Below are positions 9,001 through 48,953 of a stretch of 64,000 nt of DNA, one piece after another. The stretch is taken from positions 105,750,397 to 105,814,396 of the forward strand of contig CM097887.1 in the NCBI GenBank assembly GCA_044892525.1, read 5' to 3'. The position numbers and the translations under genes were made by a program. Origin of the DNA: Schmidtea polychroa. Its lineage: Eukaryota. A model generated the notes under the pieces. It was not told where the DNA came from. It made no database searches and saw nothing but the letters and a program-made list of their open reading frames with translations. Numbering within the stretch: position 1 is the stretch's first letter; each line of letters begins with the position of its first letter.

Positions 9001-9451
9001 AGAAATTGGATTCTAAATTCACTACAACAGATCAAACAAGAATTCTTGAAACTTCTACGTCTTCAGAAATGACTTCGATTGTAGTTCACGAAACAGCAAC
9101 AGATGGGTCTGACGGCATTTTGAATGAGATTTTCCAGGAATTAGAGGAAAAGAATCGAGAAATTTCAATGCTTCAAGACCACAAAAGCTCTCTGATACAT
9201 GAAATTGATCAAATGAAACGAGAACTTATTAACAAAGACGCAGATGTAGAATTGAAATTGAAAGAAAAGAACAGTTTCATTATTGAATTGGAAAGGCAGA
9301 AAACGGAGTTGGAACAAAATGTCGAATATTTGACAAAGGAAATGAGCGAATGCGTGATTTACCGAAAGGATGGAGACGCGAATGAGAAACTTGTTGAGTT
9401 GTATAAAGAACTAGAGATTAAGAACCACGATTTGATGTTGTTGAGAAATGA
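1..9451 (+). repeat. Coding tandem array, 996-bp unit (332 aa), about 9.5 copies, near-identical
   Basis: The unit start AAGATCTTTTGAAAG recurs at 1, 997, 1993, 2989, 3985, 4981, 5977, 6973, 7969 and 8965. The last copy diverges at ~9452. Only a few variant bases were seen (218/3206, 238/3226, 2687, 6393, 6698). Confidence 0.98.
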
Positions 9452-9695
9452 GAAAGCAGCTATTCTTGTTGACTTTCATAGTTTGACTTCTGATTTGATT
9501 TCGAAGTTACATCAATTTGATCATGTGACTTCCCATAAAGAATCTTTGATCAAAGATCTTCTCACTCAGATAACAAGCTCAAGACCTCATTTACCAACCC
9601 CTCTTGTGGCTGAACTCCAATCTCATATTGTTTTGTTGGAACGCGAAATTTTGCTTTTGCAATCGAAATATTTCAATTTGAAATTATCTTTGCAA
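1..9695 (+). CDS. Giant internal coding exon (5' end outside window) of a very large coiled-coil repeat protein
   Basis: The frame is open from the window start to a GTGAG donor at 9696 (...LKLSLQ|gtgagt, phase 0). The E/K/L-rich heptad sequence has Ser/Thr-rich linkers. The ORF-track start at 9 and the tail after 9695 are artefacts of an unspliced read-out. No orthologue recognised. Confidence 0.9.
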
Positions 9696-10665
9696 GTGAG
9701 TTTTTTGTTTTTCTATTATTATTGGTTTATCTTAATTATCTCTCTTTCTTTATCTTAATTTTTGTTATGTTTTTTTACATTTATTATATTTATAATATTT
9801 TTATTTGATATAATTTCGGATTTTTTTAATTTTTTTCATTTTCATTTTTTGAAAGACCCTTTTTATGTTTATTTAATATAACTTACATTGCACTCCTGGC
9901 ATGAAGGTAAGTTTGTCCTATATGTCTGAGCGCTGCGTTTACAAAAAGTACAAAATGTAAATTTTTCATGAATCTTGATAAAAATCTTTTTGTTCTTTTG
10001 TTTTTTCTGTATACGTAATATACTAATTATGAATGTTTTCTCTTTTTTGGGAAAATTTTATAACATCACTCATTTGAGCGTTTCCCTAGCAACAATATCT
10101 TTGAAATTCCTCTTATATAAGTTAGACTTTGGATTACTTTATCATTAGTAAGTTGTGAGCCCGTAACATCAAATTGAAAAGTATACCAAACCCGCTTTAA
10201 TTCACTTTAAATGTAGAAAAGGTGTATTTGATATAGACATTTCGGTATAAAAGGAATAAACCTAATACAAATAAAAGCCAAAGTCAACGAAATGATCTCA
10301 TCTCAAAAAACTTCAAAACAAAATTTAGAATTTTTGTTTTAATTTTTCATTCAGCTCGTTTCTTTTGAAAATCTTTCTCAACTTGTCCATTTCCTAATAG
10401 AGTGGTGATATTTATCAACTTTTTATGCATTTTTCAGTTGTTAAAATTATTTTTGTTTACAATTGGTAACATATGGGGAAATAGTGTAAGCGATATCTAT
10501 TATACAAAAGTCTTTCAGTGTACAGATGTTCTCTGTGACTTTCAATAAATACTGTTTCTTTAACTTTGTATTTTGCCGGTTTGAAGCGTCATATATTGAA
10601 TAACAAAATAATAAACCGGGGCATTATGGCGTTCGGAAAGGTCTTGCTGAGACAAAAAGGATTAA

Positions 10666-12108: not shown

Positions 12109-13306
12109 ATTACAATTTACAGCTTGGCCTTTATCAAGTTTTATAATAAGTGTAATAGCACTTGATAAAAGCAAATCCGAAAATTTATGTTACATATAAT
12201 TAAGTTTTGACCTTTTATCAGAATTAAAATAAATAATCGGAAAAAGAAAAGATCGAAATTGACCAAAAAAAATAATCTATTGTTTTTTCTGATGGTAATA
12301 CAAATTTACTTGAAAAAGGCAGTGCCGAAAATTCGTGAGTATCAAAAAAATCATCGATATATAGTCTTCAAGCTCTTTTTTTAATAAATTCAATGGAAAA
12401 ATAATCACTGGTGAAATTGGAAAAAAAGTTCTTATAGTACAATAGTATTAATATTTAATTTATTATGGCTAGACCAGGTTAGAAAGTTGGTAAAAATATT
12501 AAAGGTGTTGGAGTTAGTAAGAAAACCAAAAAATACGTATATATAAAAGGAAGACATAACAAATATTGGTAAAATCAATAAAAGTGCAAAATTGATTAAA
12601 ACTTACTAAAAATCAAAAGTCAATATCGGGTATGGTTGAACGCCAAATCGATCGATTAGATAAGAGTTGGATTATTTCGAGCGCCAATCTAGGATAAACA
12701 AGTTAAATTAATTTGGAAACCTTCAAATGTTTATCTAGGATTAACGGGAAATTATTAATTGCGATTCTGTAAATAATTGCCTTCTAAGAAACAATATAAA
12801 AAGAGAGCTCAGAAACAGACAGGCCACCAGTTGTTCAAAGAAACAAAGAGAATCTCAGAGATTCAGGGATCAGTGATAGAAGAACGAAATATAATAATTT
12901 TAAAAAAGGTATAATTTTCGTACCAGAAAAGGTGATTGCCCCTTGGGCTATCTACCTTATCGAGTAATATTACTTTTGACCAAAAGGTGCAAATATAGTG
13001 ACAAATTGTAATTTTATTGAAATTGAATTAAGTTATTCAGTGTTAGGTTTCGACTTATCTGTTTTAATAAGAACACGAGAAGTCAGCGAGAGAACCGACT
13101 TTAAAAATAAAACCAAACAAAGGCAGATTACAAAATTACAGATATTTTGGAAAAATAAAATTGACATTACACAGAGCGTGTGGATCATTTATAATTTAAT
13201 ATTTTAAAGAAAATACTTGAAACATTAGTTATAATATGAATAATATAAATCAGAAATTGTCAGTGTCTGGTTTGGACCACTACTTAGTAGGTAGTTAGTA
13301 GCCCAC

Positions 13307-13347
13307 GGGAACAATTACCCCCCCCCCGGGGGGGGGGGTTTGTTCCC
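13307..13347. other. Subterminal hairpin GGGAACAA-tta-C10-G11-t-TTGTTCCC (mirror copy C8G8 at 29690-29725)
   Basis: Self-complementary sequence starting 21 bp inside each terminus of the palindromic element. Confidence 0.9.
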
Positions 13348-13439
13348 AAATTTTTATTACGCAATTGTTCCCAACTCATTTTTTTGCTTTCAGGGATTTT
13401 TGGTCCAAATTTTTTTTTATCAGACTATAGTGAGGGGGT

Positions 13440-14230
13440 CTCGATGGTCCTGGGATTTTCAATACAAAAAAATTTTTTCTATACAAAAACGATGGTCCTG
13501 GGATTTTCAATACAAAAAAAATTTTTTCAATACAAAAACGATGGTCTTGGGATTTTCAATACAAAAATTTTTTTCAATACAAAAACGATGGTCCTGGGAT
13601 TTTCAATACAAAAAAATTTTTTTCAATACAAATAAAATTTTTTCAATACAAAAATCCGACTACCACTAAAAAAGCCAAGGATTTTTCAGACTATAGTGAG
13701 GTGAGTCTCCTTGGTCCTGAGAAATAGGTGGTCTACACTAAAAAACGTGGTAAATTTTTCAATTACAGTAAATAATGGTTCTAAAAATTGAATTAAAGTA
13801 AATTATGGTCCAAAAATTTAAATTAAAGTAAATAATGGTTCTAAATTTTAAATTAAAGTTAATTAAGGTCCAAATTTTTTTTTATCAGACTATAGTGAGG
13901 GGGTCTCGATGGTCCTGGGATTTTCAATACAAAAATTTTTTTTCAATACAAAAATCCGACTACCACTAAAAAAGCATAGAATTTTCAGACTGTAGTGGGG
14001 GGGGGGTCTCGATGGTCCTAGGATTTTCAATACAAAAAAAAAATTTCAATACAAAAACGATGGTCCTGGGATTTTCAATACAAAAACGATGGTCCTAGGA
14101 TTTTCAATACAAAAAAAAAATTTTTCAACACAAAAAGCTGGTCTACAATAAAAAAGCATGGTAATTTAAGGTCTTAGGATATTTTCAATACAAAAAGCTG
14201 GTCTACACTAAAAAAGCCAAGGATTTTTCA
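13440..14230 (+). repeat. Subterminal ~47-49 bp repeats (GATGGTCCTGGGATTTTCAATACAAAA...) with related modules; mirror at ~28630-29610
   Basis: GATGGTC recurs at 13443, 13491, 13540, 13587 and again at 13900-14110. These repeats explain the repetitive ORFs 13340-13669, 13384-13635, 29338-29697 and 29372-29653. Confidence 0.9.
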
Positions 14231-14299
14231 GACTATAGTGAGGTGGGTCTCCTTGGTCCTGAGAAAAAGGTGGTCTACACTAAAAAACGTGGTAAATTT

Positions 14300-14900
14300 T
14301 TCAATTAAAGTAAATTATGGTTCTAAAAATTGAAATTAAAGTAAATAATGGTCCAAATTTTAAAATTAAAGTAAATTATGGTTCTAAAAATTAAATTATA
14401 GTAAATTATGGCTCAAATTTTTAAATTACAGTAAATTATGGTCCTAAAAAATTAAATTACAGTAAATTATGGTTCTAAAAAATTAAATTACAGTAAATTA
14501 TGGCTCAAATTTTTAAATTACAGTAAATTATGGTCCAAATTTTTAAATTAAAGTAAATAATGGTTCTAAAAATTAAATTAAAGTAAATTATGGCTCAAAT
14601 ATTTCAATTACAGTAAATTATGGGTCTAAAAATTGAATTAAAGTAAATTATGGTTCTAAAAATTGAAATTACAGTAAATTATGGTCTAAAAATTAAATTA
14701 CAGTAAATTATGGTCAAACATTTTAAATTAAAGTAAATAATGGTCCAAATTTTTCAATTAAAGTAAATAATGGTTCTAAAAATTAAATTATAGTAAATTA
14801 TGGCTCAAATTTTTAAATTACAGTAAATTATGGTCCTAAAAAATTAAATTACAGTAAATAATGGTCCAAATTTTTAAATTAAGTAATCAATGGTAAAAAA
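14300..14900 (+). repeat. 30-31 bp satellite (AAATTACAGTAAATTATGGTYC...); mirror at ~28080-28620
   Basis: GTAAATTATGG recurs every 30-31 bp (14401, 14431, 14462...). A shorter block lies at 13760-13880. Confidence 0.9.
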
Positions 14901-15179
14901 TTTTAAATAAGTAAATTAAAGTAATAATTTTTAAATAAGTAAATTAAAGTAATGTAATAAGTAAATTAAAGTAAGATTTTAAAATTTAATTACAAAATAA
15001 TAGAAGGTGTTTGAGAATTGAAATTTTTTAATGAAAATTTTTATGAAATAATTTTTAAGTAATTTTTAATAGAAATTTTAATGAAATATTTTTCAATGGT
15101 AATTTTTAATGGAAATTTTTAAGATAATTTTTAATGGAAATTTTTATGAAATATTTTTCAAAGCAAATTTTAATAATAA

Positions 15180-16430
15180 TTCAACAACAAACCAACAACT
15201 TAGTACCAACATGTATTTACAACCAGATACCTACAACTAGTTACTAACAACCAGTTACCTGATACCAAGTACCTACAACTAGATACTAACAATCAGTTAC
15301 CTGCTACCTAGTACTTACAACTAGTTACTAACAACCAGTTACCTGCTACCAAATACTTACAACTAGTTACTAACAACCAACTACTTACAACTAGTTACTA
15401 ACAACCTGTTACCTGCTATCAAGTACTTACAACAAGATACCAAGTACTAAGCACAGTCAACTAGATACCAAACACTTACAACTAGATACCACGTACTAAC
15501 TAACTCTCAAACAACTAGTTACTAACAATCAGTTACCTGCTACCAAGCACTCAACCGTCAACAACCAGTTACTAAGCATTATTAACCAACTACTAAGTAC
15601 CTACAACCACCTACCCATTAACTAGCTACAACCACCTAACAACCAATTACCTTCAACTAGTTACTAACAACTAGTTACCTGATAGCAACCAACTAGGTAC
15701 CAGATACCAAGTACTAACAACCGCCAACAACCAGATACCTACAATTAGTTACTAACAACCAAAAACAACCAACCAACCAGTTACCTGATACCAAGTACTA
15801 ACAACCAGTTACCTTATACCAGATACCTACAACTAGTTACTAACAACTAGTTACCTGATAGCAACCAACTAGGTACCAGATACCAAGTACTAACAACCGC
15901 CAACAACCAGATACCTACAATTAGTTACTAACAACCAAAAACAACCAACCAACCAGTTACCTGATACCAAGTACTAACAACCAGTTACCTTATACCAGAT
16001 ACCTACAACTAGTTACTAACAACTAGTTACCTGATAGCAACCAACTAGGTACCAGATACCAAGTACTAACAACCGCCAACAACCAGATACCTACAATTAG
16101 TTACTAACAACCAAAAACAACCAACCAACCAGTTACCTGATACCAAGTACTTACAACCAGTTACCTTATACCAGATACCTACAACTAGTTACTAACAACT
16201 AGTTACCTGATAGCAACCAACTAGGTACCAGATACCAAGTACTAACAACCAGTTACCAACTACTAAGCATTAATTACCTACAACTAGTTACTAACAACTA
16301 GATACCAAGTACATACAACCAACATCAACCAGATACTAAGCATTATCAACCAAGTACTAACAACCAAGTAACTTACCAAGTACTAAGCACTGTCAACTAG
16401 ATACCAAACACTTACAACCAGATGACCACA
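15180..16430 (+). repeat. Strand-skewed C/A-rich array containing a 176-bp higher-order unit; G/T-rich mirror at ~26720-27795
   Basis: Built from ACTAAC/TACC/AACC/CTAG words. The unit recurs at 15665, 15841, 16017 and 16193. The CCGCC marker occurs 3 times on the left and 2 times (GGCGG) on the right. Confidence 0.9.
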
Positions 16431-16841
16431 TGAAATTAATGGTTAAATATGAAAATAAGGATTATATTTAGTTGTTAAGTAAATAATGGTGTAAAATTAA
16501 GAAATAAAGAATAATTAGGTAAATTAAAGTAATAATTTTTAAAAAAGTAAATTAAGGTTCAAAATTTAAAATTAAGTAATAAATGGTTCAAATTTTAAAT
16601 TAAAGCTAAAGAAGTAAATTAAAGTAGTAATTTTTAAATAAGTAATGTAATAAGTAAATTAAACTACGATTTTTAAATTTATTATCAAAAGATTGAATAA
16701 CCACCAACTTTTTTGAGAAATGTAATTTTTAATGAAAATTTAAATGGAAATTTTTTTTTAAGTTAATTTTCAATGTAAAATTTTTTAAGTAAATTTTAAT
16801 GAAATAATTTTTTAAGTTAATTTTGAATGAAAATTTTAATG

Positions 16842-16843
<2 letters not shown>

Positions 16844-16887
<44 letters not shown>
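16844..16887 (+). repeat. (AAT)n microsatellite; the mirror (ATT)n at ~26245-26304 is 5 units longer
   Basis: Directly visible. It gives the poly-Ile runs in the mirrored ORFs of 79 aa versus 84 aa. Confidence 0.95.
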
Positions 16888-17318
16888 TCAACAATCAGTT
16901 ACCAACAACCAGATACTAAATATTTTTCACTATGTGCTAAGAAATAAGTACCAAATACTTTCAACACGATACCACGTACTAACTAACTCTCAAACAACCA
17001 CATACTTACAACTAACTACTAAATATTCTTTATTGTATTTTATGAAATGCTTTTTAAATTAATTTTTTATCTGTCTTCAAAAATATGTTTAATTACAATC
17101 AGTAGAAAAAATCTTTTCAAATTTAACAAAAATGTTGATTTTCATCAAAAAATAATTGACAACTCATCACCACGTGAAATTCAAAATAATTTAAGTTACA
17201 ATGAAAGACTAATGAATTCTAATTTACAAAACATTCTTCTTTTAAATGATAACTACTGACTTATTATTGCAAAGTAAAAATCACATTCAATAAATACTTA
17301 TTATTGATCAGTTTTATT

Positions 17319-20300
17319 ATATATACTCTGAGTTTATCCGACAGGATGTTTTGACCCCCTAAGGGTACAGGTCGTAAGGGTATTAGTCGTAAGGGTACTG
17401 GTCGTAAAGGTACTAGTCGTAGGGGTATTGGTAACACTTAACCACAACCTACCAATTAACTAGCTACTATGTACTAACCACTAGGTTTCAAACAACAACT
17501 ACTAACAACCACCATCAAAACCCATCGAGAAATTAACAAATATCAACCTACAACTATATAACAATCAGTAAACAACACTGTACCAACTACCAAATACAAG
17601 ATACCAACAACTTAGTACCAACAATCAACTAACAACACATAAAAATAATAGCAATTAAATACAAAATATTCTTCATCGCATACACTATTTTCTTATCAAA
17701 ATCTAAAAAGTCAATCAGATACCAACTACCAAGTACCAAGTACTAACAACCAACTACCTAGAACCAACAACTATGTACTAACAAATTGATCTTTAAAAGC
17801 AAATACTCTTCACTTGAAAAATTGGATGAAAAATTATTTGAACTCAAGGCATCAATAACTTGGTAAAAATTGATTAAATAATTGTAAAAATTTAAATTAT
17901 TCAAAATAAATATCATAAAAATTTAATTAATGGACAAGAAAAAATTCTAATCATCCAATAAATAAAAAAAAATGCTGATCATTCAAGTTGAATCAACTAA
18001 GATAATAAATTAATAAGATAAGATCTAGTAGATAATTGATTAAGATTGAATAAATTAATTTAAATAAAATAAAATTTAATTATTTTTGTAAAAGTAATAC
18101 ATGTACTCAAATTGATTGACTGATTTCTCAATATATTCAAAAAAAATCAGTATAAATTCATTACAATTATCAAAGTCAGCAATCTACAATAAAAATAATT
18201 ATCATAAAATTCCAAAAGAGACTAGATAACTAATGATAACATCTAATAAACCAGTAAATTTATTTAAATGACAATAATTGGTATATCCTAGTGAATTCTC
18301 CAATTTCTCATTTCCTCCCAAATATATCAATATGTAAAGATTAGTATTGTAATGATAAATACTTGTTAAAGATCATATATTTACCTCAAACTAACAAGAT
18401 TCCTTAAAATCCCTTAAATGACTATATTTCTACCCTTAATTCATATTATTACAAATATTTCACTAAAATCATCTAAAAAGCATCAAATTTCCCTGAAATA
18501 ACTATCTTTTAAGATTGATATTTTAATGATAAGTACTTGTTAAAGATCATATATTCCCCTCAGACTAATAAGATTGCTTAAACTCCCTTTTAATTGCCTA
18601 TAATTCTAACTTTAATTCCTATTATCATACATGTTTCACTATTGATAAAACCGGTTATAATTAACTTTTTGTTAATCACTGTACTCGAAATTTAAAATAA
18701 ATATAACTGACTAGGTCCCATTAAAAGATTAAATTTATCCATTCAATAAAATATATTTCTTCAAATGATCATTTTTACCAATATTCAACCGATTTAATTA
18801 CTAATTAAAATCAAGATTTCTTCCAATAAAGATCAATTTTATTTAGTCGATGTTTTAAGTCCATATTTCTAAACTTTTGTCATTCTCCGCCTAAATAAAG
18901 ATAAAAATAAATTAAAGTTGATATCAATCCCAATTATCTGTAAAGATTTCATTGTCAAAACCAAGTAAATCGATCATTATCCCTACTTAATAAAACATTG
19001 TTCTAAATTAATTTACTATGCATTAATCACAACCTAATAAAACGATATAATTATTATTGATTCATAACTGACTAATGTATTGCAATTTCCTTAAAAAACA
19101 TTGATATTTTACCAACATCACCCTTAAAAAATCATATATTCCCATCGAAACCCTTCCCTCATTAAAAGCAACCGACTATATCTCCCTTACAATAATATAT
19201 TCCCATCTTAACCCATCTCACATTAAATCTAACCGACTATATCCCCTTAAAAGATCATATTTTCCCCATCTTAACCGATCTCTCATTAAATCTAACCGAC
19301 TATATCCCTTTAAAAATCATATATTCCCATCTCTCATTAAATCTAATCGATAATATCCCATCTTATCCGATCTCTCAGCAAATATTTCTACCCTTTTAAA
19401 CATCTATCCGATTATATCCCTTAATTTCCCTAAAGATTCCACCCACTTGAACCCTTTAATATATATCAATCCTCTTAATATCCTTAGAGAACTTCAAAAA
19501 GTATGAATTTTCATAAACTGTTAAAGACACCAGGCATTCTTCCATTGAAATAATTTAGAAGCTAAATAATAAGAGCCCACTAAAAGATCAAAATTTACTA
19601 AAATTTTCTACAAATATTTACCATCAAATACTGGAGATGATATATATTGATTGATCATAATTCTTCATCGATTCAACCAATCATTTTCAAGCAATAACAG
19701 CAAACTAAATTTCTGTATATCCTACAATAATTATCAAGTAAATTTAAAGTCATTGATAAAGTTGGTTTCTTAGCTTATGTTTTTTAAAGTGCATCAATGT
19801 GTAAATATTCTTAGAAAATTATTGAAAAAAATTATCTAGTCAAATATATTACAAAGTTATCATCAAAAATTTATTCTATCACTTAATTATTAACCTAATT
19901 GTCAATGAAATTAATTTTTATTTAAAAACTATTCAATAAAATACAACTAATTATCAAGAAATTAACTAAATTTATCAATTAAATTTATCACCATTAAAAC
20001 TTTTAATCAGTCAACATGAAATTCTTAGAAAATTATTCAATATCCTCATAAAAATTTATCCTACCACTTCATTATTGTAAAATCTCTAATTATTAACCTC
20101 ATTGAAAATAATTTTTATTTAAAATTAAAAAAAAAACAAGTCAATAAAAATACATCCAATTATCAAGAAATTAATTAAATTTATCTTAGAATTAGCATTA
20201 AATTATTAAATATTCATTCAATAAACATGAAATTTGCAAAAATGTTAGAAATCCATGAAAATGATAGATATCTACAAAAATTACGCATATTCACAAAAAA

Positions 20301-20559
20301 GTACGGAAATTCATGAAAATAATAGAAAATTACAAAAAATGATAGAAATTCATAAAAATGATAGAAATTTACTTGAATAAAACCATCAACTCTAAAAAAT
20401 TATCAATACCTTAAACAACAAATTTGTCTAAATTCAAATAAAAACATTAAATACCTTTACGACTAATACCCTTGCGACATGTTGAATGTGAGTAGTACCC
20501 TTGTGAGCAATACCCATAGGGGGACAGAATATTTTGTCGGATAAACTCAGAGTATATAT
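17319..20559. mobile_element. Nested ~3.2-kb non-autonomous TIR element inside the left arm
   Basis: ATATATACTCTGAGTTTATCCGACA at 17319 and its reverse complement ending at 20559. About five 15-bp subterminal repeats (AGGGTAYTRGTCGTA) lie at 17360-17430. TA-rich flanks suggest Tc1/mariner-like targeting (uncertain). Confidence 0.7.
19140..19400 (+). repeat. Degenerate ~60-bp repeats (CATATATTCCCATCTTAACC...TCTAACCGACTATATCCC); mirror at ~23740-24000
   Basis: About four degenerate copies visible. Confidence 0.7.
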
Positions 20560-21165
20560 TAATTAACTCATTTATCATTGAATTAGTCAAATTATCGTAA
20601 ATTTCGATAAAAAATCTAAAGTGGTAAGCAATGTAAAGAGAAATATTCTTTAAATTTTGATAAAATTAACAATGAAGGTGGTAAGAATCTTCATTAAAGT
20701 GAGGAAATTATTCATTACTCGATTCAAATGGGTGAAAATAATTGGTAGAATAATCCATTAATGGAGGTAGATAATGAGAAGTGGCATATATAAGAAGAAG
20801 GTGGATAAGAATGGAAGTATATTAATTGAATTTATTTAAAATTATTTCATAAAATTCATAAATTTAATAAAAAAAAAACTTTTAAAACAAATATTTGTGG
20901 GGATGTTTTAAGTGAATAATTAATAAAAATCGGCGGAATATAATTGATTAAATATCGGGGGGTGGGGGTTATAAGTGAATAATTAGTGGAAAATAAAGGG
21001 GATATAAGTGAATAATTAATGGAGAATCGGGGGGAATATAGGAGATTAAATAGTGGGATAATGAGAATCGGTGGAATATAAGTGAGAAGGATATGTAATT
21101 TAAATTATTTTATTACGTAACAAGCCACGACTAGTTTATTACATAACAAGCCGTGACTAGTTTAT

Positions 21166-21943
21166 TACATAACAAGCTGTGAATAGTATTTTATTGAAAA
21201 TTATTGATTAGGTCTTTTTTTTTTTAATTTTTGAATAGGTACTTTAATACCTTAATAATTTAAATGTTTTGATTTACACTAAATAATTTCTAAATCAATT
21301 ACCCTTTTCAATCAATATAAGTTAATATTCAAATATAAGTCTTCGAAAATATAAATTTTATAAGTAAAGCTTTTTTAAATAAATTTAAATAAGAAATTAA
21401 TTTATTACCAGTTATATACTTTAAAACTTATTTATTGAATAAAACATTAGAAATAAAAAAGTTTTTGTTGTATAAAATACAATTAAAATTAAATTCTTTA
21501 CACTAAATTTAAAAATATAAGTTTTATTAGAAAATGTGAATAAAAAATTGAATTATTAACAGTTATAGACTTTTTAAACTTAATGATGGAATTAGGTAAT
21601 AGAAAGTAAATATTTTTTTTAAAAAAAGACCTTTAATATTGTAGCTATTTATTATTAAATTTACTATTTTACACTAAATATTTCGATTTAGAAAACAATC
21701 ATCACAATATTAAATGTGATACTTCAATCAAAATAAGTTAATACTCAAATATATGTCTTATAAAATACAATTAAAATTAAATACTTCACTAATTTTAAGT
21801 AAAGTTTTTTAAATTCTCAAATAAATGTTAACAAGATATTAATTTATTAATTATTATAGATTTTTTAAACTTATTATTGAAATTAAACAATAGAATGATA
21901 TTCAAAATATATACAATTTTAAAATATAATTAAAATTAAAATT
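21166..21943. other. Non-palindromic AT-rich spacer (loop) of the fold-back element, flanked by 26-bp repeats
   Basis: Arm symmetry stops here. The 26-bp units AATAAAATAGTCGTGGCTTGTTACGT border it (21108-21186 and 21944-22030). Degenerate direct repeats (TTATTA.CAGTTATA.ACTTT..AAACTTA) occur at ~21400, 21555 and 21845. Confidence 0.8.
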
Positions 21944-22573
21944 ATAAACTAGTCACGGCTTGTTATGCAATAAAATAGTCGTGGCTTGTTACGTAATAAA
22001 ATAGTCGTGGCTTGTTACGTAATAAAATAGTTTAAATTACATATCCTTCTCACTTATATTCCACCGATTCTCATTATCCCACTATTTAATCTCCTATATT
22101 CCCCCCGATTCTCCATTAATTATTCACTTATATCCCCTTTATTTTCCACTAATTATTCACTTATAACCCCCACCCCCCGATATTTAATCAATTATATTCC
22201 GCCGATTTTTATTAATTATTCACTTAAAACATCCCCACAAATATTTGTTTTAAAAGTTTTTTTTTTATTAAATTTATGAATTTTATGAAATAATTTTAAA
22301 TAAATTCAATTAATATACTTCCATTCTTATCCACCTTCTTATCTATGCCACTTCTCATTATCTACCTCCATTAATGGATTATTCTACCAATTATTTTCAC
22401 CCATTTGAATCGAGTAATGAATAATTTCCTCACTTTAATGAAGATTCTTACCACCTTCATTGTTAATTTTATCAAAATTTAAAGAATATTTCTCTTTACA
22501 TTGCTTACCACTTTAGATTTTTTATCGAAATTTACGATAATTTGACTAATTCAATGATAAATGAGTTAATTAA

Positions 22574-25500
22574 TATATACTCTGAGTTTATCCGACAAAA
22601 TATTCTGTCCCCCTATGGGTATTGCTCACAAGGGTACTACTCACATTCAACATGTCGCAAGGGTATTAGTCGTAAAGGTATTTAATGTTTTTATTTGAAT
22701 TTAGACAAATTTGTTGTTTAAGGTATTGATAATTTTTTAGAGTTGATGGTTTTATTCAAGTAAATTTCTATCATTTTTATGAATTTCTATCATTTTTTGT
22801 AATTTTCTATTATTTTCATGAATTTCCGTACTTTTTTGTGAATATGCGTAATTTTTGTAGATATCTATCATTTTCATGGATTTCTAACATTTTTGCAAAT
22901 TTCATGTTTATTGAATGAATATTTAATAATTTAATGCTAATTCTAAGATAAATTTAATTAATTTCTTGATAATTGGATGTATTTTTATTGACTTGTTTTT
23001 TTTTTTAATTTTAAATAAAAATTATTTTCAATGAGGTTAATAATTAGAGATTTTACAATAATGAAGTGGTAGGATAAATTTTTATGAGGATATTGAATAA
23101 TTTTCTAAGAATTTCATGTTGACTGATTAAAAGTTTTAATGGTGATAAATTTAATTGATAAATTTAGTTAATTTCTTGATAATTAGTTGTATTTTATTGA
23201 ATAGTTTTTAAATAAAAATTAATTTCATTGACAATTAGGTTAATAATTAAGTGATAGAATAAATTTTTGATGATAACTTTGTAATATATTTGACTAGATA
23301 ATTTTTTTCAATAATTTTCTAAGAATATTTACACATTGATGCACTTTAAAAAACATAAGCTAAGAAACCAACTTTATCAATGACTTTAAATTTACTTGAT
23401 AATTATTGTAGGATATACAGAAATTTAGTTTGCTGTTATTGCTTGAAAATGATTGGTTGAATCGATGAAGAATTATGATCAATCAATATATATCATCTCC
23501 AGTATTTGATGGTAAATATTTGTAGAAAATTTTAGTAAATTTTGATCTTTTAGTGGGCTCTTATTATTTAGCTTCTAAATTATTTCAATGGAAGAATGCC
23601 TGGTGTCTTTAACAGTTTATGAAAATTCATACTTTTTGAAGTTCTCTAAGGATATTAAGAGGATTGATATATATTAAAGGGTTCAAGTGGGTGGAATCTT
23701 TAGGGAAATTAAGGGATATAATCGGATAGATGTTTAAAAGGGTAGAAATATTTGCTGAGAGATCGGATAAGATGGGATATTATCGATTAGATTTAATGAG
23801 AGATGGGAATATATGATTTTTAAAGGGATATAGTCGGTTAGATTTAATGAGAGATCGGTTAAGATGGGGAAAATATGATCTTTTAAGGGGATATAGTCGG
23901 TTAGATTTAATGTGAGATGGGTTAAGATGGGAATATATTATTGTAAGGGAGATATAGTCGGTTGCTTTTAATGAGGGAAGGGTTTCGATGGGAATATATG
24001 ATTTTTTAAGGGTGATGTTGGTAAAATATCAATGTTTTTTAAGGAAATTGCAATACATTAGTCAGTTATGAATCAATAATAATTATATCGTTTTATTAGG
24101 TTGTGATTAATGCATAGTAAATTAATTTAGAACAATGTTTTATTAAGTAGGGATAATGATCGATTTACTTGGTTTTGACAATGAAATCTTTACAGATAAT
24201 TGGGATTGATATCAACTTTAATTTATTTTTATCTTTATTTAGGCGGAGAATGACAAAAGTTTAGAAATATGGACTTAAAACATCGACTAAATAAAATTGA
24301 TCTTTATTGGAAGAAATCTTGATTTTAATTAGTAATTAAATCGGTTGAATATTGGTAAAAATGATCATTTGAAGAAATATATTTTATTGAATGGATAAAT
24401 TTAATCTTTTAATGGGACCTAGTCAGTTATATTTATTTTAAATTTCGAGTACAGTGATTAACAAAAAGTTAATTATAACCGGTTTTATCAATAGTGAAAC
24501 ATGTATGATAATAGGAATTAAAGTTAGAATTATAGGCAATTAAAAGGGAGTTTAAGCAATCTTATTAGTCTGAGGGGAATATATGATCTTTAACAAGTAC
24601 TTATCATTAAAATATCAATCTTAAAAGATAGTTATTTCAGGGAAATTTGATGCTTTTTAGATGATTTTAGTGAAATATTTGTAATAATATGAATTAAGGG
24701 TAGAAATATAGTCATTTAAGGGATTTTAAGGAATCTTGTTAGTTTGAGGTAAATATATGATCTTTAACAAGTATTTATCATTACAATACTAATCTTTACA
24801 TATTGATATATTTGGGAGGAAATGAGAAATTGGAGAATTCACTAGGATATACCAATTATTGTCATTTAAATAAATTTACTGGTTTATTAGATGTTATCAT
24901 TAGTTATCTAGTCTCTTTTGGAATTTTATGATAATTATTTTTATTGTAGATTGTTGACTTTGATAATTGTAATGAATTTATACTGATTTTTTTTGAATAT
25001 ATTGAGAAATCAGTCAATCAATTTGAGTACATGTATTACTTTTACAAAAATAATTAAATTTAATTTTATTTAAATTAATTTATTCAATCTTAATCAATTA
25101 TCTACTAGATCTTATCTTATTAATTTATTATCTTAGTTGATTCAACTTGAATGATCAGCATTTTTTTTTATTTATTGGATGATTAGAATTTTTTCTTGTC
25201 CATTAATTAAATTTTTATGATATTTATTTTGAATAATTTAAATTTTTACAATTATTTAATCAATTTTTACCAAGTTATTGATGCCTTGAGTTCAAATAAT
25301 TTTTCATCCAATTTTTCAAGTGAAGAGTATTTGCTTTTAAAGATCAATTTGTTAGTACATAGTTGTTGGTTCTAGGTAGTTGGTTGTTAGTACTTGGTAC
25401 TTGGTAGTTGGTATCTGATTGACTTTTTAGATTTTGATAAGAAAATAGTGTATGCGATGAAGAATATTTTGTATTTAATTGCTATTATTTTTATGTGTTG

Positions 25501-25814
25501 TTAGTTGATTGTTGGTACTAAGTTGTTGGTATCTTGTATTTGGTAGTTGGTACAGTGTTGTTTACTGATTGTTATATAGTTGTAGGTTGATATTTGTTAA
25601 TTTCTCGATGGGTTTTGATGGTGGTTGTTAGTAGTTGTTGTTTGAAACCTAGTGGTTAGTACATAGTAGCTAGTTAATTGGTAGGTTGTGGTTAAGTGTT
25701 ACCAATACCCCTACGACTAGTACCTTTACGACCAGTACCCTTACGACTAATACCCTTACGACCTGTACCCTTAGGGGGTCAAAACATCCTGTCGGATAAA
25801 CTCAGAGTATATAT
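22574..25814. mobile_element. Mirror copy of the nested TIR element inside the right arm
   Basis: ATATATACTCTGAGTTTATCCGACAAAATATTCTGTCCCCC near 22574 and GTCGGATAAACTCAGAGTATATAT ending near 25814. Confidence 0.7.
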
Positions 25815-26245
25815 AATAAAACTGATCAATAATAAGTATTTATTGAATGTGATTTTTACTTTGCAATAATAAGTCAGTAGTTATCATTTAAAAGAAGAAT
25901 GTTTTGTAAATTAGAATTCATTAGTCTTTCATTGTAACTTAAATTATTTTGAATTTCACGTGGTGATGAGTTGTCAATTATTTTTTGATGAAAATCAACA
26001 TTTTTGTTAAATTTGAAAAGATTTTTTCTACTGATTGTAATTAAACATATTTTTGAAGACAGATAAAAAATTAATTTAAAAAGCATTTCATAAAATACAA
26101 TAAAGAATATTTAGTAGTTAGTTGTAAGTATGTGGTTGTTTGAGAGTTAGTTAGTACGTGGTATCGTGTTGAAAGTATTTGGTACTTATTTCTTAGCACA
26201 TAGTGAAAAATATTTAGTATCTGGTTGTTGGTAACTGATTGTTGA

Positions 26246-26306
<61 letters not shown>

Positions 26307-29300
26307 CATTAAAATTTTCATTCAAAATTAACTTAAAAAATTATTTCATTAAAATTTACTTAAAAAATTTTACATTGAAAATTAACTTAAAAAAAAATTT
26401 CCATTTAAATTTTCATTAAAAATTACATTTCTCAAAAAAGTTGGTGGTTATTCAATCTTTTGATAATAAATTTAAAAATCGTAGTTTAATTTACTTATTA
26501 CATTACTTATTTAAAAATTACTACTTTAATTTACTTCTTTAGCTTTAATTTAAAATTTGAACCATTTATTACTTAATTTTAAATTTTGAACCTTAATTTA
26601 CTTTTTTAAAAATTATTACTTTAATTTACCTAATTATTCTTTATTTCTTAATTTTACACCATTATTTACTTAACAACTAAATATAATCCTTATTTTCATA
26701 TTTAACCATTAATTTCATGTGGTCATCTGGTTGTAAGTGTTTGGTATCTAGTTGACAGTGCTTAGTACTTGGTAAGTTACTTGGTTGTTAGTACTTGGTT
26801 GATAATGCTTAGTATCTGGTTGATGTTGGTTGTATGTACTTGGTATCTAGTTGTTAGTAACTAGTTGTAGGTAATTAATGCTTAGTAGTTGGTAACTGGT
26901 TGTTAGTACTTGGTATCTGGTACCTAGTTGGTTGCTATCAGGTAACTAGTTGTTAGTAACTAGTTGTAGGTATCTGGTATAAGGTAACTGGTTGTAAGTA
27001 CTTGGTATCAGGTAACTGGTTGGTTGGTTGTTTTTGGTTGTTAGTAACTAATTGTAGGTATCTGGTTGTTGGCGGTTGTTAGTACTTGGTATCTGGTACC
27101 TAGTTGGTTGCTATCAGGTAACTAGTTGTTAGTAACTAGTTGTAGGTATCTGGTATAAGGTAACTGGTTGTTAGTACTTGGTATCAGGTAACTGGTTGGT
27201 TGGTTGTTTTTGGTTGTTAGTAACTAATTGTAGGTATCTGGTTGTTGGCGGTTGTTAGTACTTGGTATCTGGTACCTAGTTGGTTGCTATCAGGTAACTA
27301 GTTGTTAGTAACTAGTTGAAGGTAATTGGTTGTTAGGTGGTTGTAGCTAGTTAATGGGTAGGTGGTTGTAGGTACTTAGTAGTTGGTTAATAATGCTTAG
27401 TAACTGGTTGTTGACGGTTGAGTGCTTGGTAGCAGGTAACTGATTGTTAGTAACTAGTTGTTTAGGAGTTAGTTAGTACGTGGTATCTAGTTGTAAGTGT
27501 TTGGTATCTAGTTGACAGTGCTTAGTACTTGGTATCTTGTTGTAAGTACTTGATAGCAGGTAACTGGTTGTTAGTAACTAGTTGTAAGTAGTTGGTTGTT
27601 AGTAACTAGTTGTAAGTATTTGGTAGCAGGTAACTGGTTGTTAGTAACTAGTTGTAAGTACTAGGTAGCAGGTAACTGATTGTTAGTATCTAGTTGTAGG
27701 TACTTGGTATCAGGTAACTGGTTGTTAGTAACTAGTTGTAGGTATCTGGTTGTAAATACATGTTGGTACTAAGTTGTTGGTTTGTTGTTGAATTATTATT
27801 AAAATTTGCTTTGAAAAATATTTCATAAAAATTTCCATTAAAAATTATCTTAAAAATTTCCATTAAAAATTACCATTGAAAAATATTTCATTAAAATTTC
27901 TATTAAAAATTACTTAAAAATTATTTCATAAAAATTTTCATTAAAAAATTTCAATTCTCAAACACCTTCTATTATTTTGTAATTAAATTTTAAAATCTTA
28001 CTTTAATTTACTTATTACATTACTTTAATTTACTTATTTAAAAATTATTACTTTAATTTACTTATTTAAAATTTTTTACCATTGATTACTTAATTTAAAA
28101 ATTTGGACCATTATTTACTGTAATTTAATTTTTTAGGACCATAATTTACTGTAATTTAAAAATTTGAGCCATAATTTACTATAATTTAATTTTTAGAACC
28201 ATTATTTACTTTAATTGAAAAATTTGGACCATTATTTACTTTAATTTAAAATGTTTGACCATAATTTACTGTAATTTAATTTTTAGACCATAATTTACTG
28301 TAATTTCAATTTTTAGAACCATAATTTACTTTAATTTAAATTTTAGAACCATTATTTACTTTAATTTAAAAATTTGGACCATAATTTACTGTAATTTAAA
28401 AATTTGAGCCATAATTTACTGTAATTTAATTTTTTAGAACCATAATTTACTGTAATTTAATTTTTTAGGACCATAATTTACTGTAATTTAAAAATTTGAG
28501 CCATAATTTACTATAATTTAATTTTTAGAACCATAATTTACTTTAATTTTAAAATTTGGACCATTATTTACTTTAATTTCAATTTTTAGAACCATAATTT
28601 ACTTTAATTGAAAAATTTACCACGTTTTTTAGTGTAGACCACCTTTTTCTCAGGACCAAGGAGACCCACCTCACTATAGTCTGAAAAATCCTTGGCTTTT
28701 TTAGTGTAGACCAGCTTTTTGTATTGAAAATATCCTAAGACCTTAAATTACCATGCTTTTTTATTGTAGACCAGCTTTTTGTGTTGAAAAATTTTTTTTT
28801 TGTATTGAAAATCCTAGGACCATCGAGACCCCCCCCCCACTATAGTCTGAAAATTCTATGCTTTTTTAGTGGTAGTCGGATTTTTGTATTGAAAATCCCA
28901 GGACCATCGAGACCCCTCACTATAGTCTGATAAAAAAAAATTTGGACCTTAATTAACTTTAATTTAAAATTTAGAACCATTATTTACTTTAATTTAAATT
29001 TTTGGACCATAATTTACTTTAATTCAATTTTTAGAACCATTATTTACTGTAATTGAAAAATTTACCACGTTTTTTAGTGTAGACCACCTATTTCTCAGGA
29101 CCAAGGAGACTCACCTTAATTTAATTCGAAAAATCCTTGGCTTTTTTAGTGTAGACCACCTATTTGTATTGAAAATATCCTGAGACCTTAAATTACCATG
29201 CTTTTTTAGTGGTAGTCGGATTTTTGTATTGAAAATATCCTGAGACCTTAAATTACCACGTTTTTCTAGTGTAGACCACCTATTTCTCAGGACCAAGGAG

Positions 29301-29752
29301 ACTCACCTCACTATAGTCTGAAAAATCCTTGGCTTTTTTAGTGGTAGTCGGATTTTTGTATTGAAAAAATTTTATTTGTATTGAAAATCCCAGGACCATC
29401 GTTTTTGTATTGAAAAAAATTTTTTTGTATTGAAAATCCCAGGACCATCGTTTTTATATTGAAAAAAATTTTTTGTATTGAAAATCCCAAGACCATCGTT
29501 TTTGTATTGAAAAAATTTTTTTTGTATTGAAAATCCCAGGACCATCGTTTTTGTATAGAAAAAATTTTTTTGTATTGAAAATCCCAGGACCATCGAGACC
29601 CTCTCACTATAGTCTGATAAAAAAAAATTTGGACCAAAAATCCCTGAAAGCAAAAAAATGAGTTGGGAACAATTGCGTAATAAAAATTTGGGAACAAACC
29701 CCCCCCGGGGGGGGTAATTGTTCCCTTGGGCTACTAACTACCTACTCTACTT

Positions 29753-33054: not shown

Positions 33055-33826
33055 TATGGATGTACCTGTTTTCGGCTCCGGCTCCAGTAAGCCGGACTTT
33101 CGGCATTTTGTACAGCACTATAATGATCAAATAACATTTCACTGTCTAATCAGGCCTAATGATTGTGACCATGTTATATTTTGATTGCATTGAAAGATTA
33201 CGTGAAGTGGCAAATGCTTAATATCAATCAGACCAGCAAAAATATACACTCCCGTATATAAGCAGAGATACAGGAGTGCACTCACGCATTGAATGTGCTT
33301 CTGAGAATAGTCCCCGGGGTTTCCTGGATGAGCTATTGTCCTCATCATCCCATACTTCTCCTGCTCCATCCCAAGTGGAGGCAGGGCTTGCAACGTACTT
33401 TGCTGAATGTGTTCTCCCTCGAAAAGAGGACCAATTCTTGTGGTGGAATATGAATATGCACCGTTTCCCGTCGCTGTCCAATTTAGCTCACAGGTACATG
33501 GCTTCACCTTCAACGAATGTCCCCTCAGAGAGAGTTTTTAGTACCGCAGGCAACGTCATTTCAGATCATCGTTCGCGTTTACTTCCATTAAATGCAGAAA
33601 GACTCATTTTTTTAAAATTTAATTTTCATTTCCTTTATGTCTCTGTTGTTTAATAGTAATATATGTATTCTGAGTTCCTTCTACTTATACTGTAAAAAGA
33701 GCATTTGACGGAAATGCATGTTTATTTTCTAAAAAACCGGCTCCGTCACCGGCAGGTTTTGTTGGCAAAAAAATAAACCCGCTTCGGCTTTTGCTGGTTA
33801 AAAAAAACGATACCGGTACATCCCTG
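33055..33826 (+). mobile_element. Internally deleted hAT derivative (772 bp)
   Basis: TIR TATGGATGTACC vs (reverse complement) CAGGGATGTACC; exact 8-bp TSD CAAATAAT (33047-54 and 33827-34). Confidence 0.88.
33276..33653 (+). pseudogene. hAT transposase C-terminal dimerization domain remnant
   Basis: WWNMNMHRFPSLSNLAHRYMASPSTNVPSERVFSTAG matches the hATC WW..FP.L..A...P.TS..SER.FS motif; the N-terminal and most catalytic regions are absent. Confidence 0.88.
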
Positions 33827-34233: not shown

Positions 34234-34374
34234 NNNNNNNNNNNNNNNNNNNNNNNNNNNNNNNNNNNNNNNNNNNNNNNNNNNNNNNNNNNNNNNNNNN
34301 NNNNNNNNNNNNNNNNNNNNNNNNNNNNNNNNNNNNNNNNNNNNNNNNNNNNNNNNNNNNNNNNNNNNNNNNNN
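34234..34374. other. Assembly gap (further gaps at 37626-37769, 48516-48653, 49060-49192)
   Basis: Runs of N, 133-144 nt each. Confidence 0.99.
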
Positions 34375-48133: not shown

Positions 48134-48953
48134 GTAAATTCAATTATGATATCGTTTGTTCACTTAATCCACTTAATCATTTGATAAAGTTTTCCATAAT
48201 TATTCCTGTCGACAACATTGGAGAAATGTTTTATGGGAAAAATAATTTATATAAGAAAAAAAACTGACTGTCACAATAATCTAAGTCACTATCGAAACCG
48301 ATTTTTTGTGTTAAGATTAGAAACGAAATTAATTCCAACATGAGTTCTTCAGCTTTGACTGCTATATTAGAAATCTCATTTATAATTCACGAGAAATAAT
48401 TTCGTTCTAATTCTCATATAGACTAAATTATTTTGTTTAAATCACACATTTTTAATGGAAGGTTTTATGCTAATTTCTCTCATTTATCATTTTTGTTGTT
48501 GATTAACTGTCATAGNNNNNNNNNNNNNNNNNNNNNNNNNNNNNNNNNNNNNNNNNNNNNNNNNNNNNNNNNNNNNNNNNNNNNNNNNNNNNNNNNNNNN
48601 NNNNNNNNNNNNNNNNNNNNNNNNNNNNNNNNNNNNNNNNNNNNNNNNNNNNNTTTAACTTTTAAAAATTTGAAAATTTAATAATTTTTTTTTAATTTTA
48701 CATTTAAATTCTTGAAAATTTTTTTTTCATTTATTTCCACTAATTAGAAAGCAGGAAATGAATTTAACAACAAAGATCACCAAAGCAATTGAAAATTGTA
48801 ACAACTAAATTCCACCGTCTATACACAGTTTACAAGAGCATCCGTAAACCTTTAGCATTTTTAACTTGTAATGTTGTAAAATATTTTTTACGGATGTCTA
48901 ACATTAAAATAAAATAAACATTACAAGCTTTGTGATACCCAGTACAAATCCCA

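What the first reader, a model, noticed from the sequence alone, without database searches (positions are those of the whole stretch)
13280..29752. 16.5-kb gene-less palindrome with Polinton/Maverick-type ends and an exact 6-bp TSD
Seen: two ~7.8-7.9 kb arms in perfect inverted orientation around a ~0.8 kb spacer, with ends 5'-AGTAGGTAGTTAGTAG...CTACTAACTACCTACT-3', CTACTT duplicated on both flanks, and no coding capacity. Established: 6-bp TSDs with AG/AGT-repeat termini are typical of Polintons/Mavericks (retroviral-type integrase, protein-primed PolB). Their TIRs are usually hundreds of bp to about 1 kb and flank many genes. Inference: this is a non-autonomous Polinton parasite whose TIRs have grown to cover ~95% of a body that still has Polinton length. 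It may be copied as a single-stranded hairpin and mobilised (possibly packaged) in trans. I know of no described fold-back class with this combination, but I cannot search.
Basis: partly seen in the sequence, partly recalled or inferred. Interest (0 to 1): 0.92.

Follow-up and report, generated by a model that had tools for sequence, protein, structure and literature searches.

The report
Gene-less fold-back transposon with Maverick-like ends
A real 16.5-kb DNA insertion that encodes nothing and is almost entirely two mirror-image halves; its ends and 6-bp insertion scar look like those of Maverick/Polinton virus-like elements, but no link to an actual Maverick could be shown.

Summary
Window 13286-29746 (16,461 bp) is a bounded inverted repeat. 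The arms are 7,917 and 7,814 bp, around an asymmetric 730-bp spacer. The ends are AGTAGGTAGTTAGTAG / CTACTAACTACCTACT, flanked by an exact 6-bp direct repeat, CTACTT. The arms are not perfect. They differ by about a dozen substitutions (~0.15%) and seven indels of whole tandem-repeat units. Nothing in the element is coding.

Anatomy: the outer 3.6 kb of each arm is 73% tandem arrays, as in classical fold-back elements. Each arm also carries the same nested 3.2-kb TIR element. Arm identity drops sharply from ~99.9% to 85% in the last 100 bp before the spacer, which suggests one-step fold-back copying primed at an older short inverted repeat.

The Maverick reading is only partly supported. The 6-bp TSD, the AGT-type reiterated end (5 of 6 positions of the published (AGT)2 motif) and the length (published mean 16.9 ± 1.7 kb) all fit. 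However, there are no Maverick genes, no second copy and no autonomous partner, and the source organism is unknown.

Best reading (~0.45): a non-autonomous fold-back element integrated in trans by a Maverick-type integrase. Main rival: a fold-back element of another superfamily that makes 6-bp TSDs. Rating: a new variant of a known kind.

The parts
13280..13285 (.). Left copy of the target-site duplication, CTACTT
   Evidence: identical 6-mer directly outside both ends; the repeat cannot be extended in either direction.
13286..29746 (.). Whole fold-back element, 16,461 bp, non-coding, 25.8% G+C (flanks about 28%)
13286..13301 (+). Left terminal 16-mer AGTAGGTAGTTAGTAG. It is C-free and internally reiterated: AGTAG occurs twice and GTAG three times.
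   Evidence: It matches the published Maverick (AGT)2 end motif at 5 of 6 positions (PMC8097293).
13307..13347 (+). Subterminal 41-nt palindrome (GGGAACAA..C10/G11..TTGTTCCC) just inside the left end
   Evidence: DNA fold -20.7 kcal/mol, z = -3.9, 0 of 200 shuffles fold as well. The homopolymer runs are shorter in the right-end copy.
13286..21202 (+). Left arm, 7,917 bp. The inward-reading strand is G-poor (G 10.7%, C 15.7%).
13442..16887 (+). Outer tandem-array domain of the left arm. Unit sizes are 49, 30, 13/65 and 14/28/42/88/176 bp, plus (AAT)15. 73% of 13286-16887 is tandem repeat.
   Evidence: The arrays at 15.26-16.35 kb hold terminus-like motifs in the orientation of the far end.
17325..20553 (+). 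Nested non-coding TIR element (~3.2 kb) in the left arm. Its ends read A[C/G]TCTGA[G/A]TTTATCCGACA, with 15-bp subterminal repeats, and it is flanked by ATATAT on both sides (TSD length ambiguous).
   Evidence: A related end fragment lies at 57779-57875.
21105..21202 (+). Inner 26-bp tandem array of the left arm. It is only 85% complementary to its partner at 21933-22035 and may be an older short inverted repeat that primed the fold-back.
   Evidence: 15 mismatches lie in these 98 bp, against none in the preceding 310 bp.
21203..21932 (.). Asymmetric spacer or loop, 730 bp, 85% A+T, with degenerate direct repeats only
21933..29746 (-). Right arm, 7,814 bp, the mirror image of the left arm
22579..25808 (-). 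Mirror copy of the nested TIR element in the right arm
   Evidence: (I1 and I4: 3,294 nt with 2 mismatches; 693 nt at 99%). Coordinates were mapped from the left copy.
26246..29595 (-). Outer tandem-array domain of the right arm. It has the same arrays as the left arm but different copy numbers (indels of 29, 192, 19, 77, 60, 176 and 15 bp).
29690..29725 (-). Subterminal palindrome, right-end copy
29731..29746 (-). Right terminal 16-mer, CTACTAACTACCTACT on the + strand
29747..29752 (.). Right copy of the target-site duplication, CTACTT

Best explanation
This is a genuine insertion of a non-autonomous, non-coding fold-back transposable element. It probably sits in an intron of a + strand coiled-coil gene of an A+T-rich animal genome. 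It was inserted as one 16.5-kb unit by an enzyme that cuts the target with a 6-bp stagger.

The most likely enzyme is the retroviral-type integrase of a Maverick/Polinton acting in trans. The reasons are the 6-bp TSD, the AGT-type reiterated 5'-AG...CT-3' ends, and a total length inside the narrow Maverick size range.

The palindrome was most likely made in one step on a free linear copy. A strand ending just past a pre-existing imperfect ~100-bp inverted repeat (the 26-bp arrays on either side of the loop) folded back and was extended along the ~7.8-kb left part. This produced a molecule with two identical valid ends. A fully palindromic strand would snap back into a hairpin whose duplex terminus is equivalent to the panhandle used by protein-primed replicons.

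Shown: the bounds, the TSD, the end motif, the lack of coding capacity, the mirrored nested element and arrays, and the sharp step in identity.
Inferred: the identity of the mobilising enzyme, the fold-back copying event, and any replication or packaging in trans.
For: Bounds and TSD:
- Exact 6-bp TSD, with the inverted repeat ending precisely at it.
- The end AGTAGG...CCTACT matches the published vertebrate Maverick motif 5'-(AGT)2//(ACT)2-3' at 5 of 6 positions. A random end would do so about 0.5% of the time (my estimate).
- That motif always comes with 6-bp TSDs and is thought to serve 'jumping-back' in protein-primed replication (PMC8097293).

Other candidates excluded:
- Other 6-bp-TSD superfamilies have TA..TA or TGTNR ends (PMC10045372; PMC2836005).
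- The only intact transposase in the window is a hAT whose own element has TAGGGTTG ends and an 8-bp TSD.

Size: 16,461 bp against 16,862 ± 1,678 bp for intact Mavericks.

One-step origin:
- Eight array types and a 3.2-kb nested TIR element are mirrored with ~12 substitutions in ~7.8 kb.
- There are then 15 mismatches in the 98 bp next to an asymmetric loop.
- Palindromic 'snap-back' genomes made by reverse-complementary copying are a recognised class of defective viral genome (PMC13506859).

Polinton TIRs are known to extend, to ~2 kb with genes inside.
Against: - No second copy and no autonomous element could be examined.
- No Maverick gene or gene remnant was found in the arms, the loop or the rest of the window.
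- The end motif is imperfect (AGTAGG, not AGTAGT), and the published motifs come from vertebrates, whereas this genome is not vertebrate-like (about 25% G+C, introns of 50-60 bp).
- The match in length may be coincidence.
- The outer arms have the tandem-array architecture typical of cut-and-paste fold-back elements (PMC4079207).
- The element's G+C content equals that of its flanks, so nothing marks it as virus-derived.
- Template switching during gap repair at a chromosomal donor site could give the same palindrome without any replicative linear form.
- The near-identity of the arms could be inflated by assembly polishing.
- Exact-match scans of the viral and metagenome collections with terminal and subterminal motifs found nothing related.
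Confidence: 0.45

Rival explanations
1. A fold-back, cut-and-paste element of a different DDE superfamily that also makes 6-bp TSDs. This could be an undescribed lineage, an atypical IS3EU/GingerRoot or Ginger2 relative, or a hAT subgroup with short TSDs. In this reading the long TIRs arose, as in FB, Galileo and Tetris, by loss of the transposase gene, expansion of tandem repeats and template switching during gap repair. The resemblance to Maverick ends would be coincidental.
For: - The architecture is classical fold-back: the outer arms are 73% tandem arrays, the middle is non-coding, and array copy number varies between the arms.
- The literature says the fold-back structure evolves independently in different superfamilies by loss of the transposase and elongation of the TIRs (PMC4079207).
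- The window holds other TIR elements with tandem subrepeats, for example 55451-56239.
- Terminus-like motifs are amplified inside the arms, as transposase-binding sites are in Galileo TIRs (PMC3688188 appears in the results list, and I did not read it).
Against: - Fold-back elements with a known partner are mostly Mutator (8-10 bp TSD) or P (7 bp).
- The described 6-bp-TSD cut-and-paste superfamilies have TA..TA or TG..CA ends, not AG..CT.
- The window's hAT does not match in its ends or its TSD.
Confidence: 0.3
2. A conventional short-TIR element inserted here, and the palindrome arose afterwards in place. The mechanism would be intra-element gene conversion or repair copying one half onto the other. 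On this reading the 16.5-kb palindrome never moved as a unit.
For: - Only one copy is seen.
- The arms are almost identical, as expected for a young or continually converted palindrome.
- The TSD and termini would survive such an event.
Against: - It needs a template switch across the whole element that precisely preserves both ends.
- The sharp boundary at the central 26-bp arrays and the asymmetric loop are explained equally well or better by fold-back priming on a free end.
- The two readings cannot be separated with one copy.
Confidence: 0.15
3. An assembly artefact: a fold-back chimeric read or a mis-join created or exaggerated the palindrome.
For: - Palindromic chimeras are a known failure of long-read libraries (my own knowledge).
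- Homopolymer lengths differ between the two subterminal palindromes, which hints at error-prone reads.
- Arm identity could be inflated by polishing.
Against: - The two flanks are unique and different, and they share an exact 6-bp TSD.
- The inverted repeat ends exactly at a defined terminal motif on both sides.
- The 730-bp loop is asymmetric.
- The arms differ by seven whole-unit indels.
- A chimera would produce none of these features.
Confidence: 0.05

Closest known systems
Maverick/Polinton elements (polintoviruses)
   Same: - 6-bp TSD.
- 5'-AG...CT-3' ends with AGT-type reiteration.
- Total length inside the constrained ~17-kb range.
- TIRs that can lengthen, to ~2 kb in Lepidoptera.
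   Different: - It encodes none of the defining genes (pPolB, integrase, capsid, ATPase, protease), and no remnants were detected.
- TIRs cover 95.6% of the element, against a typical 46-1,447 bp.
- The arms are tandem arrays plus a nested transposon.
- No sequence homology to any Maverick was shown.
Fold-back transposons (Drosophila FB, Galileo, Tetris; nematode Tm1)
   Same: - Very long TIRs built of tandem subrepeats.
- A short non-coding middle domain.
- Unequal array copy numbers between the arms.
- Non-autonomous.
   Different: - Those families make 7-bp (P/Galileo) or 8-10-bp (Mutator-type) TSDs and have other end motifs.
- Arms of 7.9 kb that include a whole nested transposon are unusually long.
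Snap-back defective viral genomes
   Same: An almost fully palindromic molecule made from one end of a linear genome by reverse-complementary copying, with two identical replication-competent ends and dependent on a helper (PMC13506859). That adenovirus makes such molecules is my own recollection and was not verified; the paper I tried was not held.
   Different: - Here the molecule is integrated in a chromosome with a TSD.
- It carries no viral sequence that I could recognise.
- Any helper dependence or packaging is conjecture.
IS3EU/GingerRoot and Ginger2/TDD DNA transposons
   Same: 6-bp TSDs and integrase-related transposases.
   Different: Their termini are TA..TA (occasionally TG..CA) or TGTNR. 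The termini here are AGTAGG...CCTACT.

Membership tests
Maverick/Polinton | 6-bp target-site duplication | tested here: met
   CTACTT at 13280-13285 and 29747-29752, exactly 6 bp. Criterion from PMC8097293 and PMC10045372.
Maverick/Polinton | Reiterated end motif 5'-(AGT)2//(ACT)2-3' or 5'-(AG)3//(CT)3-3' | tested here: inconclusive
   The ends are AGTAGG//CCTACT, which matches (AGT)2 at 5 of 6 positions, with further AGTAG/GTAG reiteration inside the 16-mer. The published motifs come from vertebrates only.
Maverick/Polinton | Encodes a protein-primed family B polymerase and a retroviral-type integrase (by definition; PMC5499653) | tested here: not met
   No frame longer than 124 aa. The 20 longest pieces have no Pfam match. 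It is therefore not an autonomous member; at most it is a non-autonomous dependant.
Maverick/Polinton | Terminal sequence shared with an autonomous Maverick of the same genome (the criterion for a non-autonomous derivative) | not testable with these tools
   The source genome is not available. Exact-match scans of viral and metagenome contigs gave nothing related. Look-ups of ORFs from the window found no public contig.
Maverick/Polinton | Length of about 13-25 kb with a constrained mean near 17 kb | tested here: met
   16,461 bp against 16,862 ± 1,678 bp. This may be coincidence.
Fold-back elements (structural class) | Long TIRs that make up most of the element, built of tandem subrepeats, around a short middle domain | tested here: met
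   The arms are 95.6% of the element, the outer 3.6 kb is 73% tandem arrays, and the loop is 730 bp.
FB/Mutator-type fold-back elements | 8-10-bp TSD | tested here: not met
   The TSD is 6 bp. Criterion from PMC4079207.
IS3EU/GingerRoot | 6-bp TSD together with TA..TA (or TG..CA) termini | tested here: not met
   The TSD length fits, but the termini are AG..CT and no alternative phasing gives TA..TA ends.
Ginger2/TDD | TGTNR termini and an A+T-rich RTATAY target | tested here: not met
   The termini are AGTAG and the target is CTACTT.
hAT (the intact copy in this window as possible mobiliser) | 8-bp TSD and matching TIR ends | tested here: not met
   The window's hAT element, 50583-53922, has TAGGGTTG ends and the 8-bp TSD ATTTAAAT. 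The fold-back element shares neither.

The most novel reading that the evidence does not exclude
The element is an integrated satellite of a Maverick virus-like element, comparable to a defective-interfering genome. On this reading it is a gene-less snap-back genome that keeps only the ends needed for protein-primed replication and integration. It would be held at capsid-filling length (~16.5 kb) by non-coding stuffer, would self-correct its arms through the hairpin form, and would be replicated, and perhaps packaged, entirely in trans. This would be the first described gene-less Maverick parasite and sequence-level evidence that the Maverick machinery acts in trans on foreign DNA.
Probability: 0.22. 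Interest if true: 0.85.

Novelty: new variant of a known kind. Interest (0 to 1): 0.55.

Why it matters
Gene-less, non-autonomous Mavericks are almost absent from the literature I could search. The phrase occurs in one held paper, and there it refers to Tlr1. If this element really uses a Maverick integrase, or the whole replication and packaging apparatus, it would show that Maverick machinery works in trans on DNA that carries only the right ends. That bears on how these virus-like elements move host cargo between genomes, and on whether they have parasites of their own, as viruses have defective-interfering genomes. If instead it belongs to another superfamily, it is an unusually large but otherwise ordinary fold-back element, and a reminder that TSD length plus two end bases is weak evidence for classification. 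In either case, a 16-kb near-perfect palindrome inside a probable intron is a likely source of hairpin RNA and of local instability.

Tried and rejected
Identifying the organism:
- Exact look-up of the window's hAT transposase found nothing.
- Its best homologue is 77% identical and comes from an unnamed Logan run, SRR33065468. That accession is not in the paper library.
- The giant coiled-coil ORF has no detectable homologue.
- No tRNA or Rfam family was found.

Finding relatives of the element:
- The terminal 20-mer and a subterminal 25-mer gave 0 hits in metagenome contigs (both scans are now used).
- The terminal 20-mer and a subterminal 20-mer gave 0 hits in viral contigs.
- The bare 16-mer gave 10 internal matches in viral contigs. 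I judged them to be chance and did not follow them up.
- Three spurious ORFs of the element were looked up in public assemblies, with none on record.
- The rest of the window has no other copy, only a fragment of the nested element's end.

Looking for coding remnants:
- All stop-to-stop frames of 45 aa or more were listed.
- Twenty of them were scanned against Pfam, with no hits.

Explanations rejected:
- Mobilisation by the neighbouring intact hAT (8-bp TSD, different ends).
- IS3EU/GingerRoot, Ginger2, FB/Mutator and P/Galileo membership (wrong ends or wrong TSD length).
- An LTR-type integrase, which would give TG..CA ends.
- A simple read chimera, because of the TSD, the distinct flanks and the asymmetric loop.

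The nested element's TSD could not be settled. It could be ATATAT, TTA or TA, so I did not use it as evidence.

The Kapitonov & Jurka 2006, Krupovic & Koonin 2015 and Daniell & Mullenbach 1978 papers are not held. Statements resting on them are marked as secondary citations or as my own knowledge.

Full report
**1. The observation**

- The window is A+T-rich, about 25% G+C outside a few islands.
- Between 13286 and 29746 lies a 16,461-bp inverted repeat.
- It begins AGTAGGTAGTTAGTAG and ends CTACTAACTACCTACT.
- The terminal 30-mer occurs only at these two places, in inverted orientation, with 0 and 1 mismatches; none are expected by chance.
- Directly outside both ends is CTACTT (13280-13285 and 29747-29752). 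The repeat is exactly 6 bp, and the inverted repeat stops exactly at it. At this base composition I estimate the chance of such a match at about 1e-3.
- The finding's coordinates are therefore right; they include the two TSD copies.

**2. Arms and loop**

- Left arm 13286-21202 (7,917 bp), right arm 21933-29746 (7,814 bp), spacer 21203-21932 (730 bp).
- The spacer contains only degenerate direct repeats, so it is truly asymmetric.
- A global alignment of one arm against the reverse complement of the other gives 7,776 matches.
- From the terminus to 21104 there are only about a dozen substitutions (~0.15%).
- There are also seven indels of 15-192 bp, each a whole number of tandem-repeat units.
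- One stretch of 3,294 nt has 2 mismatches.
- The last 98 bp before the loop (21105-21202, a 26-bp tandem array) carry 15 mismatches, whereas the 310 bp before them carry none.
- So identity does not decay gradually. It steps from ~99.9% to 85% at the edge of a small array that flanks the loop on both sides.

**3. Content**

- Nothing is coding. The longest stop-to-stop frame is 124 aa and lies in subterminal repeats.
- The 20 longest frames have no Pfam match, and there is no tRNA or Rfam family.
- The outer 3.6 kb of each arm is 73% tandem arrays, with units of 49, 30, 13/65 and 14/28/42/88/176 bp plus (AAT)n. The inner 4.3 kb is 15% tandem arrays.
- Just inside each end is a 41-nt palindrome with C10/G11 runs.
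- Each arm contains the same ~3.2-kb non-coding TIR element (17325-20553, mirrored at about 22579-25808). It has its own subterminal 15-bp repeats, and a fragment of one of its ends lies at 57779-57875.
- The inward-reading strand of each arm is G-poor.
- Motifs within 4 mismatches of the terminal 16-mer occur 24 times per arm, always in the orientation of the far end. Shuffles give 1.4, though tandem repetition inflates the observed count.
- The element's G+C (25.8%) is like that of its flanks.

**4. Surroundings**

- Positions 1-9758 are a 996-bp in-frame tandem repeat, at least 9.6 copies at 99-100% identity. It forms a 3,249-codon coiled-coil ORF that is cut by the window start and has no detectable homologue.
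- Short + strand exons with GT..AG introns of about 50-60 bp follow it at ~11.1-11.6 kb. Coiled-coil-like exons resume at ~31.07 kb.
- The element therefore probably sits in an intron of that gene (inference). The gene structure looks like that of an invertebrate animal.
- An intact hAT element lies at 50583-53922. It has zf-BED and hAT dimerisation domains, TAGGGTTG ends and the 8-bp TSD ATTTAAAT. It cannot be the mobiliser.
- No Maverick gene is present anywhere in the window.
- I left the four N runs untouched.

**5. What it is**

- It is a real transposable-element insertion with fold-back architecture. An assembly chimera would not produce distinct unique flanks sharing a TSD, defined terminal motifs, an asymmetric loop and arm-specific indels.
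- Which enzyme inserted it has to be judged from the TSD and the ends alone.
- Published data on 1,345 vertebrate Mavericks describe:
  - perfect 6-bp TSDs;
  - end motifs 5'-(AGT)2//(ACT)2-3' or (AG)3//(CT)3, interpreted as the reiteration needed for 'jumping-back' in protein-primed replication;
  - a constrained size of 16,862 ± 1,678 bp;
  - TIRs of 46-1,447 bp (PMC8097293).
- Here the ends are AGTAGG//CCTACT, a 5 of 6 match with further AGTAG/GTAG reiteration. The TSD is 6 bp and the length is 16,461 bp.
- The other superfamilies reported with 6-bp TSDs have TA..TA or TG..CA ends (IS3EU/GingerRoot) or TGTNR ends (Ginger2).
- Fold-back families with known partners make 7-10-bp TSDs.
- So the Maverick-type reading is the best available one. 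It rests on three short or soft characters and on motifs described in vertebrates.
- No homology, no partner and no second copy could be obtained.

**6. How the palindrome arose (inference)**

- Eight different arrays and a complete nested transposon are mirrored at ~99.85% identity.
- The only diverged part is a ~100-bp imperfect inverted repeat hugging an asymmetric loop.
- This is the pattern expected if a strand ending just beyond a pre-existing short inverted repeat folded back on it and was extended along the whole left part. That would create, in one step, a molecule with two identical ends.
- Such 'snap-back' products of reverse-complementary copying are a recognised class of defective viral genome (PMC13506859).
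- A free linear, replicating form, as proposed for Mavericks, would make this easy. A fully palindromic displaced strand would also form the duplex terminus that protein-primed replicons otherwise obtain through a panhandle (my own knowledge of adenovirus replication).
- Template switching during gap repair of a cut-and-paste element could give the same structure, so this step does not discriminate between the main explanations.
- The near-identity of the arms may reflect youth, gene conversion through a hairpin, or assembly polishing. I cannot separate these.

**7. Comparison and novelty**

- Structurally it is a fold-back element. The literature notes that this architecture evolves repeatedly by loss of the transposase and elongation of the TIRs.
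- It fails the defining test for a Polinton, which is to encode pPolB and an integrase (PMC5499653).
- It can only be a candidate non-autonomous dependant, and the criterion for that, ends shared with an autonomous copy, is untestable here.
- Gene-less non-autonomous Mavericks are almost undescribed in the searchable literature.
- I rate it a new variant of a known kind, with interest 0.55.
- The most novel reading not excluded is an integrated, capsid-length, gene-less snap-back satellite of a Maverick. I give it about 0.22 probability; it would deserve high interest if true.

**8. Two oddities remain unexplained**

- The target CTACTT is 5 of 6 identical to the element's own 3' end, so the left junction reads as a palindrome and the right junction as a tandem repeat.
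- The terminus-like motifs are amplified inside the arms only in the orientation of the far end.

Noticed in passing
window 1-9758 (+), with likely further exons at about 11.1-11.6 kb and 31.07-31.35 kb: A 996-bp (332-codon) in-frame tandem repeat, at least 9.6 copies at 99-100% identity. It forms a 3,249-codon coiled-coil ORF that is cut by the window start. There is no meaningful Pfam hit and no homologue in the 5.8-billion-protein collection. The fold-back element probably lies in an intron of this gene.
   Followed up: partly
window 50583-53922 (ORF 51722-53521, +): An apparently intact hAT transposon with a 599-aa transposase (zf-BED and hAT dimerisation domains), TAGGGTTG ends and the 8-bp TSD ATTTAAAT. 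Its G+C is 34-40%, against ~25% around it, which suggests a recent arrival. The best public homologue is only 77% identical, from Logan run SRR33065468. A hAT C-terminal fragment also lies at 33276-33653.
   Followed up: partly
window 17325-20553 and about 22579-25808; fragment at 57779-57875: A ~3.2-kb non-coding TIR element nested in both arms. Its ends read A[C/G]TCTGA[G/A]TTTATCCGACA and it has 15-bp subterminal repeats. All three ends are preceded by ATATATA, so the TSD could be 6 bp (ATATAT), 3 bp (TTA) or TA, and the superfamily is undetermined.
   Followed up: partly
window 57720-57988: A 269-bp MITE-like element with ~30-bp TIRs (GGCGACGCTCTAGTATAGGGGGGCAATAT...) and the 8-bp TSD TAAATTTT. 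The fragment of the nested element's end sits inside it.
   Followed up: no
window 55451-56239: A 789-bp fold-back-like MITE with CAGGGTTTTTC ends and a TA TSD (Tc1/mariner type). Its TIRs are arrays of a 21-bp unit, with several more copies on the right side than on the left. This shows that tandem-repeat TIRs are common in this genome.
   Followed up: no
junctions at 13280-13290 and 29742-29752: The target 6-mer CTACTT is 5 of 6 identical to the element's own 3' end. The left junction reads CTACT-T-AGTAG (a palindrome) and the right junction reads CTACT-CTACT-T (a tandem). This could be chance, a target preference, or a trace of end processing.
   Followed up: no
window 15262-16354 and 17005-17747 (left arm), mirrored in the right arm: Sequences within 4 mismatches of the terminal 16-mer occur 24 times per arm, always in the orientation of the far terminus. 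Dinucleotide shuffles of that region give 1.4. They belong to G-free CTA-rich arrays, and the count is inflated by tandem repetition.
   Followed up: partly
window 34234-34374, 37626-37769, 48516-48653, 49060-49192: Four runs of N, 133-144 bases long.
   Followed up: no
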